This document shows, piece after piece, positions 36,871-37,561 of a DNA stretch of 64,000 nucleotides (position 1 is the first letter of the stretch; each line of letters starts with the position of its first letter). The notes below the pieces were generated by a model, which was not told the origin of the DNA, searched no databases, and saw only the letters and a program-made list of their open reading frames with translations. Position numbers and translations under genes: made by a program. The stretch spans positions 60,016,001-60,080,000 of the forward strand of contig NC_043001.1 of assembly GCF_006345805.1 (NCBI RefSeq), given 5' to 3'. The stretch is from Octopus sinensis. Taxonomy: Eukaryota.

Positions 36871-36871
<1 letters not shown>

Positions 36872-37282
36872 TCTTTTACTTGTTTCAGTCATTTGACTGC
36901 GGCCATGCTGGAGCACCGCCTTTAATCGAGCAACTCGACCCCGGGACTTATTCTTTTGTAAGCCCAGTACTTATTCTATCGGTCTCTTTTTGCCGAACCG
37001 CTAAGTAACGGGGACATAAACACACCATCATCGGTTGTCAAGCAATGCTAGGGGGACAAACACAGACACACAAACACACACACGCATATATATATATATA
37101 CATATATATACATATATACGACGGGCTTTCAGTTTCCGTCTACCAAATCCACTCACAAGGCTTTGGTCGGCCCGAGGCTATAGTAGAAGACACTTGCCCA
37201 AGGTGCCACGCAGTGGGACTGAACCCGGAACCATGTGGTTGGTAAACGAGCTACTTACAACACAGACACCCCTGCGCCTATA
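36871..37282 (-). mobile_element. Full-length abundant tRNA-SINE with internal (CA)/(TA) tract and (AAAGAGTA) tail
   Basis: Same consensus at 38764, 51672, 60630, 62322 and 63506; B-box GGTTCAGTCCC. Confidence 0.9.
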
Positions 37283-37304
37283 GCCACTCCTGCGCCAATA
37301 AACA

Positions 37305-37561
37305 TTAGATTGGTGTTCAGTTGTATCGAACGGGCTGCTAACCGACAACTATTCACAGGCGCGATCCCACTACTGCTCGACACGGGGCCTCCTTAGACAA
37401 CCTGGTCCTGATGAGCTCCCTCTCCAGCACCATATTGATGCCGAGCTTAGGGCGGACACCTGATCGCCATAGAAGACCGACTACCAGGATTCCATCCTCA
37501 AACCGGCCAACCAACCAAGCCTCCGAGTAGCTAGATTACAGGAGCACGCCACAACTCCAAC
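37305..37561 (-). pseudogene. RN7SL: 7SL (SRP) RNA copy lacking helix 8 (about 40-nt deletion at 37387/37388)
   Basis: Reverse complement has CTATGGCGATCAGGTGTCCGCCCTAAGCTCGGCATCAATATGGTG, helix 6 with GGAG tetraloop, ACCAGGTTGTCTAAGGAGG, then CCCCGTG..CAGTAGTGGGATCGCGCCTGTGAATAG, all colinear with metazoan 7SL as recalled. Confidence 0.92.

What the first reader, a model, noticed from the sequence alone, without database searches (positions are those of the whole stretch)
36871..37561. Possible 7SL-plus-tRNA-SINE chimeric retrocopy
Seen on the minus strand: 7SL copy, a 10-nt spacer, a 14-nt duplicate of the SINE 5' end (GGCGCAGGAGTGGC), then a full SINE. The block is bracketed by (TA)n at 36841-36870 and 37567-37581. 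Known: RT template switching makes chimeras such as U6/L1, and mammals have composite 7SL/tRNA SINEs. Inferred: a single chimeric insertion and possible prototype of a 7SL-derived SINE outside mammals.
Basis: partly seen in the sequence, partly recalled or inferred. Interest (0 to 1): 0.7.

Follow-up and report, generated by a model that had tools for sequence, protein, structure and literature searches.

The report
Dead 7SL copy fused to octopus SINE
A broken copy of the signal-recognition-particle RNA (7SL) sits head-to-tail against a common octopus-type short repeat (SINE); it was probably made in one reverse-transcription accident, and it is a single dead insertion with no sign of having founded a new repeat family.

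Summary
On the minus strand the order is: (TA)8, a full-length 7SL copy (Rfam Metazoa_SRP, 165.9 bits), 8 nt TGTTTATT, an exact 14-nt copy of the SINE 5' end, TATA, a full 408-nt SINE, then (TA)15. It lacks the whole distal hairpin of helix 8 (40 nt, the SRP54 site). It has 14 non-standard pairs against 7 in an intact gene, and it scores 100 bits below intact genes. An Octopus bimaculoides 7SL-derived ORF keeps the missing segment. The 7SL starts within about 3 nt of the RNA 5' end and abuts (TA)8. It has no retroposition tail of its own and joins directly to a precise SINE 5' terminus. Only the whole block has a TSD-sized flanking repeat (16 bp of TA). That fits one target-primed reverse transcription with template jumps (SINE, 14-nt re-copy, 7SL), at about 0.5 confidence. 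Independent insertions into a TA hot spot are not excluded, because the TSD is low-complexity and the 7SL looks more decayed than the SINE body. No second copy turned up in the window, in two metagenome scans or in two protein-database searches, so the 'SINE prototype' idea has no support. The kind is known: 7SL/LINE-1 chimeras in mammals, and the hagfish SINE1 born from a 7SL plus tRNA-SINE chimera.

The parts
37567..37582 (-). (TA)8 tract directly 5' of the block; candidate 5' copy of the target-site duplication
   Evidence: TRF. The 16-bp ATATATATATATATAT is contained in the 3' (TA)15. A (TA)>=6 run within 6 nt of a given end is expected at only about 0.5% of positions.
37562..37566 (-). 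GGGGA, extra bases at the 5' junction. Together with the next GTT they repeat the adjacent GGAGTT, a possible short terminal re-copy.
   Evidence: Sequence; alignment with intact genes that start GCTGGGAGTTGTGGCG.
37305..37561 (-). 7SL (SRP RNA) pseudogene. It is full length end to end but lacks the distal helix-8 hairpin and has 14 non-standard pairs.
   Evidence: Rfam RF00017, 165.9 bits, model 1-299. Intact comparators score 268.7 bits with 7 non-standard pairs.
37385..37387 (-). Site of the 40-nt internal deletion that removes the helix-8 hairpin (GNAR loop and SRP54-binding loops), leaving GG-C-CCC
   Evidence: Rfam alignment, 40 model positions against 1 base. MAFFT against L001/L003 gives an exact 40-nt gap. 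O. bimaculoides ORF P0001 carries 13 extra residues at this point.
37297..37304 (-). TGTTTATT spacer. It is either a U-rich 3' trailer of a Pol III transcript or a decayed terminator with gene flank.
   Evidence: Sequence. Intact genes end in CCTTTTTATCTC.
37283..37296 (-). 14-nt exact copy of the SINE consensus 5' terminus, fused directly to the spacer
   Evidence: the DNA search found 3 matches, all at SINE 5' ends, with 0 expected.
37279..37282 (-). TATA between the 14-mer and the SINE. All three full SINE copies are preceded by TATAG.
   Evidence: Alignment A1.
36871..37278 (-). Full-length SINE with a Pol III box A/B head, an internal (TA)n/(TG)n microsatellite and the tail ...GACTGAAACAAGTAAAAGAG. 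Four private substitutions cluster in its first 31 nt; the rest is nearly identical to its subfamily.
   Evidence: BLAST and alignment with the other copies; box A/B.
36841..36870 (-). (TA)15 tract directly 3' of the SINE tail; candidate 3' copy of the TSD, possibly expanded
   Evidence: TRF; LCS analysis.

Best explanation
The block is a dead retro-inserted composite in an octopus-type genome. A full-length but crippled 7SL RNA copy is joined head-to-tail to a full-length copy of the locally abundant SINE. The most likely origin is one target-primed reverse transcription event. A LINE endonuclease nicked a TA tract, and the reverse transcriptase started on the SINE RNA's specific 3' tail and copied it to its 5' end. 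It then re-copied the first 14 nt of a SINE RNA, either an abortive second pass or a second SINE RNA. Next it jumped to the U-rich 3' end of a 7SL RNA and copied that to its 5' end, skipping across the base of the stable helix-8 hairpin. Finally the cDNA was joined to the upstream TA tract with a few extra bases. Shown: the anatomy, that the 7SL is a non-functional pseudogene, the precise RNA termini at the junctions, and that there is one copy in the window. Inferred: that it was a single event, the order of the jumps, and that the hairpin was skipped by the reverse transcriptase rather than deleted later.
For: (1) The 7SL spans Rfam model positions 1-299 and begins within about 3 nt of the 5' end of intact genes. 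It abuts (TA)8 and shares none of the upstream flank of the two intact genes from other organisms. (2) The 7SL has no A-rich tail or SINE/LINE-type tail, so it has no visible way to prime reverse transcription itself. Its 3' trailer runs straight into nucleotide 1 of the SINE, with no target sequence between them. This 5'-small RNA / 3'-retroelement order, with precise termini, is the signature of U6/L1-type and 7SL/L1 chimeras (PMC4476161, PMC11838501). (3) Only the whole block has a TSD of normal size: 16 bp against 4 bp (TATA) for the SINE alone and none for the 7SL alone. The clean TSD of the neighbouring copy is 14 bp. A TA run at the 7SL 5' end is a roughly 0.5% coincidence. (4) Several small anomalies fit a jump-prone polymerase: the 14-nt terminal re-copy; a possible 6-nt re-copy at the 7SL 5' end; a deletion whose ends are paired partners at the base of a hairpin; and a cluster of 4 substitutions in the 31 nt of SINE next to the junction, against about 1-2 in the other 300 nt. 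(5) Double template jumps that give tripartite chimeras with TSDs are documented (PMC2104539). (6) The 7SL is clearly dead: it has the helix-8 deletion, 14 broken pairs against 7, and 165.9 bits against 268.7. An octopus ORF keeps the missing segment.
Against: The TSD is a low-complexity TA repeat. This SINE family lands in TA-rich sites anyway, with 3 of 3 full copies preceded by TATAG and 3 of 4 copies lying in TA tracts. So the TA flanks fit separate insertions too. The 7SL carries at least 7 excess broken pairs plus indels, while the SINE body beyond nt 31 has about 1-2 private changes and all of its roughly 20 CpGs intact. Equal-age sequences should decay equally (rough binomial p of about 0.02 if the 5' cluster is excluded). 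The 14-mer lies between two mutated stretches yet is pristine. The TGTTTAT of the spacer resembles the TTTTTAT terminator plus flank of intact genes from another organism, which hints at a DNA-level gene copy. No empty or half-filled site could be examined.
Confidence: 0.5

Rival explanations
1. Two or more independent insertions into one TA-microsatellite hot spot. An older tailless 7SL retropseudogene, possibly already carrying a SINE 5' fragment, was flanked by TA repeats. A young SINE later landed in the downstream TA tract in the same orientation.
For: The SINE's own 5' flank is TATA(G), as in every other full copy, and its 3' flank is (TA)15. TA tracts are frequent, at 52 runs in 64 kb, and are the family's preferred target. 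The 7SL part is more decayed than the SINE body. SINE_37k is nearly identical to the young copy 1.9 kb away.
Against: It needs a 7SL cDNA that integrated without any tail. It needs a SINE landing within 26 nt of it in the same orientation, which I roughly estimate at a few percent even with TA targeting. It also needs a separate explanation for the orphan 14-mer, because the remainder of a disrupted older SINE is absent downstream. Four of the SINE's private substitutions lie in its first 31 nt, so divergence does not drop sharply at the SINE boundary as this model predicts.
Confidence: 0.3
2. A decayed DNA-level copy of a real 7SL gene. The (TA)8 derives from its upstream TATA-like element and TGTTTATT from its terminator and flank. 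A SINE happened to insert, or was targeted, just downstream.
For: Intact 7SL genes from other organisms have an AT-rich CATATTAAAAT element just upstream and the terminator CCTTTTTATCTC. The window reads TGTTTATT at the matching place.
Against: No similarity to the upstream region of the intact genes beyond AT-richness, although those genes come from a different organism. There are 5 extra bases and a 1-nt deletion exactly at the RNA 5' end. There is only one 7SL in the window, and it lies in a transposon graveyard. The 14-mer is still unexplained.
Confidence: 0.12
3. The block is one copy of an amplifying composite SINE with a 7SL head, which would be a cephalopod SINE1. The helix-8 deletion and substitutions would then be family-diagnostic changes rather than decay.
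For: Precedent: hagfish SINE1-1_EBu arose from a 7SL plus tRNA-SINE chimera (PMC7245038). The block contains no T4 run, so a Pol III transcript starting at the 7SL could read through to the T6 about 25 nt beyond the (TA)15. The Alu-domain 5' part is as intact as in real genes.
Against: There is one copy in 64 kb, against at least 6 copies of the plain SINE. No junction match in the metagenome contigs. No sister ORF among 5.8 billion proteins, though that is a weak test because octopus genomes are barely represented there. Known SINE1 families keep only the Alu domain, after a deletion of about 150-180 nt, whereas this copy keeps nearly the whole S domain. The SINE part is almost identical to the current SINE subfamily, so any such family would be extremely young. 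No paper in the library reports 7SL repeats in octopus.
Confidence: 0.04

Closest known systems
U6/LINE-1 and 7SL/LINE-1 chimeric retrocopies of mammals (PMC4476161; PMC11838501)
   Same: A small Pol III RNA copied to its exact 5' end sits 5' of a retroelement copy. The two are joined directly, the whole is flanked by one TSD, and the mechanism is reverse-transcriptase template switching during TPRT.
   Different: Here the 3' partner is a full-length SINE with a specific non-poly(A) tail, so the enzyme is presumably a non-L1 LINE. The host is a cephalopod-type genome. There is an extra 14-nt SINE re-copy at the junction, and the TSD is a TA microsatellite.
Tripartite chimeras from double template jumps (WEIRD/Mg-SINE/MGL in Magnaporthe; PMC2104539)
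   Same: Fusion of a cellular non-coding RNA copy with a SINE copy; more than one jump in a single event; flanked by direct repeats.
   Different: The middle 'part' here is only a 14-nt re-copy of the SINE's own 5' end rather than a third kind of transcript. The fungal example has an unambiguous 14-bp TSD.
Hagfish SINE1-1_EBu (PMC7245038) and Alu/B1
   Same: A 7SL-derived sequence joined to the body and tail of a tRNA-type SINE. This is the raw material from which a SINE1 can arise.
   Different: Those are families of thousands of copies that keep only the Alu domain. This is a single copy that keeps helix 6 and most of helix 5, has lost only helix 8, and shows decay rather than conservation.
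Classical 7SL retropseudogenes (Ullu and Weiner 1984, as cited in PMC11838501)
   Same: A non-functional genomic copy of 7SL RNA that starts at the RNA 5' end.
   Different: From my own knowledge, mammalian ones are usually 3'-truncated or A-tailed L1 products. This one is complete at the 3' end, has no tail, and abuts a SINE.
Octopus tRNA-derived SINEs (Ohshima and Okada 1994, cited in PMC4758252)
   Same: A Pol III box A/B head, a LINE-type 3' tail with short tandem repeats, and abundance in octopus-type genomes.
   Different: I could not match this family to OK/OR1/OR2 by sequence because no reference sequences were available. No tRNA model matches the head.

Membership tests
Functional metazoan SRP (7SL) RNA gene | Matches the Metazoa_SRP covariance model over its full length | tested here: met
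   165.9 bits against a gathering score of 70, model 1-299.
Functional metazoan SRP (7SL) RNA gene | Intact helix 8 (GNAR tetraloop and internal loops that bind SRP54) | tested here: not met
   40 nt missing, with only GG-C-CCC left. The segment is present in intact genes L001/L003 and in the O. bimaculoides ORF P0001.
Functional metazoan SRP (7SL) RNA gene | Helices maintained by standard pairs; Pol III T-run terminator | tested here: not met
   14 non-standard pairs against 7 in intact genes. The 3' end reads TGTTTATT instead of T5.
Template-switch chimeric retrocopy (U6/L1 type) | Order 5'-small RNA / retroelement-3', same strand, joined directly with no target DNA between | tested here: met
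   7SL, then an 8-nt U-rich trailer, then SINE nucleotide 1.
Template-switch chimeric retrocopy (U6/L1 type) | The small-RNA part reaches the exact 5' end of the RNA | tested here: met
   Model position 1; within about 3 nt of the start of intact genes, preceded by 5 extra bases and then (TA)8.
Template-switch chimeric retrocopy (U6/L1 type) | One target-site duplication flanks the whole chimera and not its parts | tested here: inconclusive
   A 16-bp TA repeat flanks the block, against 4 bp for the SINE alone and none for the 7SL alone. But it is low-complexity and is the family's usual target.
Template-switch chimeric retrocopy (U6/L1 type) | The empty site lacks both parts together | not testable with these tools
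   No cephalopod genome DNA was reachable. Exact-ORF look-ups, metagenome scans and paralogous flanks were all negative.
SINE1 (7SL-derived SINE family) | Many dispersed copies with different flanks | tested here: not met
   One copy in the window. No junction or sister ORF elsewhere. The genome-wide count was not testable.
SINE1 (7SL-derived SINE family) | Head reduced to the Alu domain by a central deletion, with the structure conserved | tested here: not met
   Only helix 8 is deleted, and helix 5 pairs are decayed; compare PMC7245038.
tRNA-derived SINE (SINE2), for the 3' partner | Head recognisable as a tRNA | tested here: inconclusive
   Box A 10/11 at nt 11 and box B 9/11 at nt 54. But there is no ARAGORN call even with relaxed settings, and no Rfam tRNA match at E<=5.
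tRNA-derived SINE (SINE2), for the 3' partner | Repeated element with defined termini, TSDs and a LINE-type tail | tested here: met
   Three full copies and at least three partial copies. There is a 14-bp TSD at the 39k copy and a (GTAAAAGAG)n tail. The LINE partner was not found in the window.

The most novel reading that the evidence does not exclude
The composite is a member, or the founder, of a very young 7SL-headed SINE lineage in octopods. That would be the first SINE1 in an invertebrate, caught at the stage where nearly the whole 7SL is still attached to the parental SINE.
Probability: 0.04. Interest if true: 0.75.

Novelty: new member of a known kind. Interest (0 to 1): 0.3.

Why it matters
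If the single-event reading holds, it shows that the LINE machinery that mobilises octopus SINEs can jump templates and capture cellular Pol III RNAs. That machinery is presumably tail-specific and not L1-like. Template jumping of this kind created Alu/B1-type and hagfish SINE1 families elsewhere, so the locus would be a snapshot of the raw material for SINE birth in a lineage where SINEs dominate the genome. As it stands, this is one decayed pseudogene with no sign of amplification or function. It is useful mainly as an annotation note: the Rfam SRP hit here is not a gene.

Tried and rejected
(1) Exact-product look-ups of four window ORFs were all negative. The ORFs covered the 5' flank plus 7SL, the junction, the 7SL core and a 314-aa RT fragment. 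(2) A homology search with the 7SL-core ORF gave only O. bimaculoides P0001, and no DNA was retrievable for it. (3) A composite query of junction-spanning and 7SL ORF pieces in other frames and strands found only intact 7SL genes of unidentified eukaryotes and no sister chimera. (4) Metagenome scans for the 7SL/SINE junction and for the lineage-specific helix 6 both returned zero. (5) I looked for a paralogous empty site, but neither flank has another copy in the window. (6) A nested-SINE model for the 14-mer was rejected because the rest of a disrupted SINE is not downstream. (7) A-to-I editing does not explain the 5' substitution cluster: only 1 of the 4 changes is A>G. (8) CpG-decay dating of the 7SL against L001 was abandoned, because at least one apparent CG>TG change is also implied by the octopus ORF P0001 (its final Leu codon) and so reflects lineage, not decay (from memory, the human 7SL reads the same there). 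(9) The bacterial-type promoter/terminator scan is uninformative here. (10) The sub-threshold miRNA-family hits are TA/TG microsatellite artefacts. (11) A third protein-database search to pin down the species was not spent, because it would not decide the question.

Full report
OBSERVATION. The minus strand of 36841-37582 reads as follows:
- (TA)8, 37582-37567
- GGGGA, 37566-37562
- a 7SL copy, 37561-37305
- TGTTTATT, 37304-37297
- GGCGCAGGAGTGGC, 37296-37283
- TATA, 37282-37279
- a 408-nt SINE, 37278-36871
- (TA)15, 36870-36841

The 7SL call is firm: Rfam Metazoa_SRP at 165.9 bits (gathering score 70), E 2.5e-43, covering model positions 1-299.

The SINE is a real repeat family. Two other full copies (39172-38773 and 62745-62337) align end to end with it, and there are partial or older copies at 60790-60600, 52008-51681 and 63512-63677. 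The family starts GGCGCAGGAGTGGCTGTGTGG and ends ...GACTGAAACAAGTAAAAGAG, followed by 0-2 further GTAAA(A)GAG units. The 39k copy has a clean 14-bp target-site duplication, TATGCCAAATATAG/TATGCCGAAAATAG.

The 14-mer is an exact copy of the family's 5' terminus. With up to one mismatch it occurs three times in the window: here, and at the 5' ends of the two other full SINE copies. None is expected by chance.

In the Rfam alignment, 40 model positions in helix 8 are replaced by one base. I fetched two intact 7SL genes from unidentified eukaryotes by searching ORFs spuriously called over 7SL genes. These are L001/L002 and L003, each 268.7 bits with a complete helix 8 and GAAA loop.
- Alignment with them shows an exact 40-nt gap. 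It removes the whole distal hairpin and leaves only GG-C-CCC at its base.
- The only close relative of the window's 7SL-core ORF among 5.8 billion proteins is an Octopus bimaculoides 'uncharacterized protein' (A0A0L8HPT1, P0001). It is 41/46 identical outside a 13-residue insertion (GRFGPGRKRSRQK) that sits exactly at the gap.

So an octopus 7SL with helix 8 exists and the window copy has lost it. The copy also has 14 non-standard pairs against 7 in the intact comparator, plus two 1-nt deletions. Helix 8 is the SRP54-binding site (established knowledge), so this copy cannot be a working SRP RNA. The P0001 match and the repeat content place the window in an octopus-type genome. I did not determine the species.

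RETROCOPY OR GENE RELIC? The copy begins within about 3 nt of the 5' end of intact genes (GTT-GGAGTTGTGGCG against GCTGGGAGTTGTGGCG). Five extra bases precede it, then (TA)8. It shares none of the upstream region of the intact genes, though those come from another organism. It has no A-rich or LINE-type tail. After the last model position comes TGTTTATT and then SINE nucleotide 1. There are 52 perfect (TA)>=6 runs in the window, covering 2.35% of bases. A run within 6 nt of a given end is expected at about 0.5% of positions, so the TA tract at the 7SL 5' end is tied to the insertion.

ONE EVENT OR TWO? Evidence for one event:
- The order is 5'-small RNA / 3'-retroelement, with precise RNA termini and no target DNA between the parts. 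This is the signature of template-switch chimeras (U6/L1, PMC4476161; 7SL/L1 and others, PMC11838501; SINE-containing tripartite chimeras from double jumps, PMC2104539).
- Only the whole block has a flanking repeat of normal TSD size: 16 bp, against 4 bp for the SINE alone and none for the 7SL alone.
- The 7SL has no tail to prime on, whereas the SINE has the specific tail.
- Several small anomalies all suggest a jump-prone polymerase. These are the 14-nt re-copy of the SINE terminus, a possible 6-nt re-copy (GGAGTT) at the 7SL terminus, and a deletion whose ends are paired partners at the base of a stable hairpin. Four private substitutions also lie in the first 31 nt of the SINE, against about 1-2 in the remaining 300 nt.

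Evidence against one event:
- The TSD is a TA microsatellite, and this SINE lands in TA-rich DNA anyway. All three full copies are preceded by TATAG, and three of four copies lie in TA tracts. A pre-existing 7SL pseudogene flanked by TA would therefore attract a SINE.
- The 7SL looks more decayed than the SINE body, which keeps all of its roughly 20 CpGs and nearly matches the copy 1.9 kb away. This could mean an older 7SL, a variant template RNA, low-fidelity synthesis after the jump, or gene conversion of the SINE by its neighbour. I could not separate these.
- The spacer's TGTTTAT resembles the TTTTTAT at the end of intact genes. That is a weak hint of a DNA-level gene copy.

A nested-SINE origin of the 14-mer is unlikely, because the rest of a disrupted SINE is not downstream. 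I put the single-event chimera at about 0.5, separate insertions at about 0.3, and a decayed gene copy with a neighbouring SINE at about 0.12.

PROTOTYPE OF A NEW SINE? There is no support for this.
- The 7SL and the junction occur once in the window, while the plain SINE occurs at least six times.
- The junction and the lineage-specific helix 6 are absent from the metagenome contigs.
- No sister ORF exists in the protein collection. That is a weak negative, because this genome is evidently not indexed there.
- Known SINE1 families keep only a structurally conserved Alu domain (PMC7245038). This copy keeps most of the S domain and is decaying.
- No paper in the library reports 7SL repeats in octopus.

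The idea that this route is unknown outside mammals is out of date. Hagfish SINE1-1_EBu arose from just such a chimera (PMC7245038; see also PMC13023118).

THE 'tRNA' LABEL. The SINE head has a box A (10/11) at nt 11 and a box B (9/11) at nt 54. But ARAGORN, even with relaxed settings, and Rfam at E<=5 give no tRNA call. A tRNA origin is plausible from the literature on octopus SINEs (Ohshima and Okada 1994, cited in PMC4758252) but is not shown here.

SURROUNDINGS. The block lies in a transposon graveyard. It contains non-LTR RT and zf-RVT fragments, two mariner/Mos1-type remnants, and a Tc3-like fragment directly downstream. No LINE 3' end in the window shares the SINE tail.

VERDICT. The locus is a non-functional 7SL pseudogene fused to a SINE. 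It is probably a template-switch chimera, which is a known kind of event and would be new only for the host lineage and the likely non-L1 machinery. It shows no sign of founding a family. The deciding tests need octopod genome assemblies and are listed under next steps.

Noticed in passing
window 21714-21760 (+): Type I hammerhead ribozyme above Rfam's gathering score (41.9 bits against 34), with an intact CUGACGAG...GAAA core. It lies about 0.9 kb past the end of the reverse-transcriptase-related (zf-RVT) ORFs at 18705-20821, so it may belong to a retroelement that carries a ribozyme.
   Followed up: partly
window 36871-37278 and 38773-39172 (-): Two SINE copies 1.9 kb apart on the same strand share the same complex internal microsatellite and are 179/181 identical in the tail, yet have different flanks. 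They are either the same very young subfamily or a case of local gene conversion.
   Followed up: partly
window 37248-37278 (-): Four of the roughly six private substitutions of this SINE copy fall in its first 31 nt, next to the junction. The adjacent 14-nt re-copy is pristine.
   Followed up: partly
window 30266-31152 (-) and 50404-51270 (-): Two degraded copies of one mariner/Mos1-type transposase family (Pfam Transposase_1, HTH_48).
   Followed up: partly
window 35894-36502 (-): A Tc3-like transposase fragment (HTH_Tnp_Tc3_2, below the Pfam cut-off) lies directly downstream of the block. The block may sit inside or beside an old DNA transposon.
   Followed up: no
L001 320-618 (-), L002 320-618 (-), L003 544-842 (+): Intact 7SL genes of unidentified eukaryotes in ENA metagenome assemblies were called as 141-158-aa 'proteins'. 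The O. bimaculoides UniProt entry A0A0L8HPT1 likewise appears to be an ORF read across a 7SL sequence. These look like spurious protein predictions over an abundant RNA gene.
   Followed up: partly
window 2057-2746, 6623-7327, 14076-15450, 19700-19890: Long trinucleotide-type low-complexity tracts produce homopolymeric 'ORFs' (poly-L, poly-I, poly-Y/C). (TA)n tracts alone make up 2.35% of the window.
   Followed up: no
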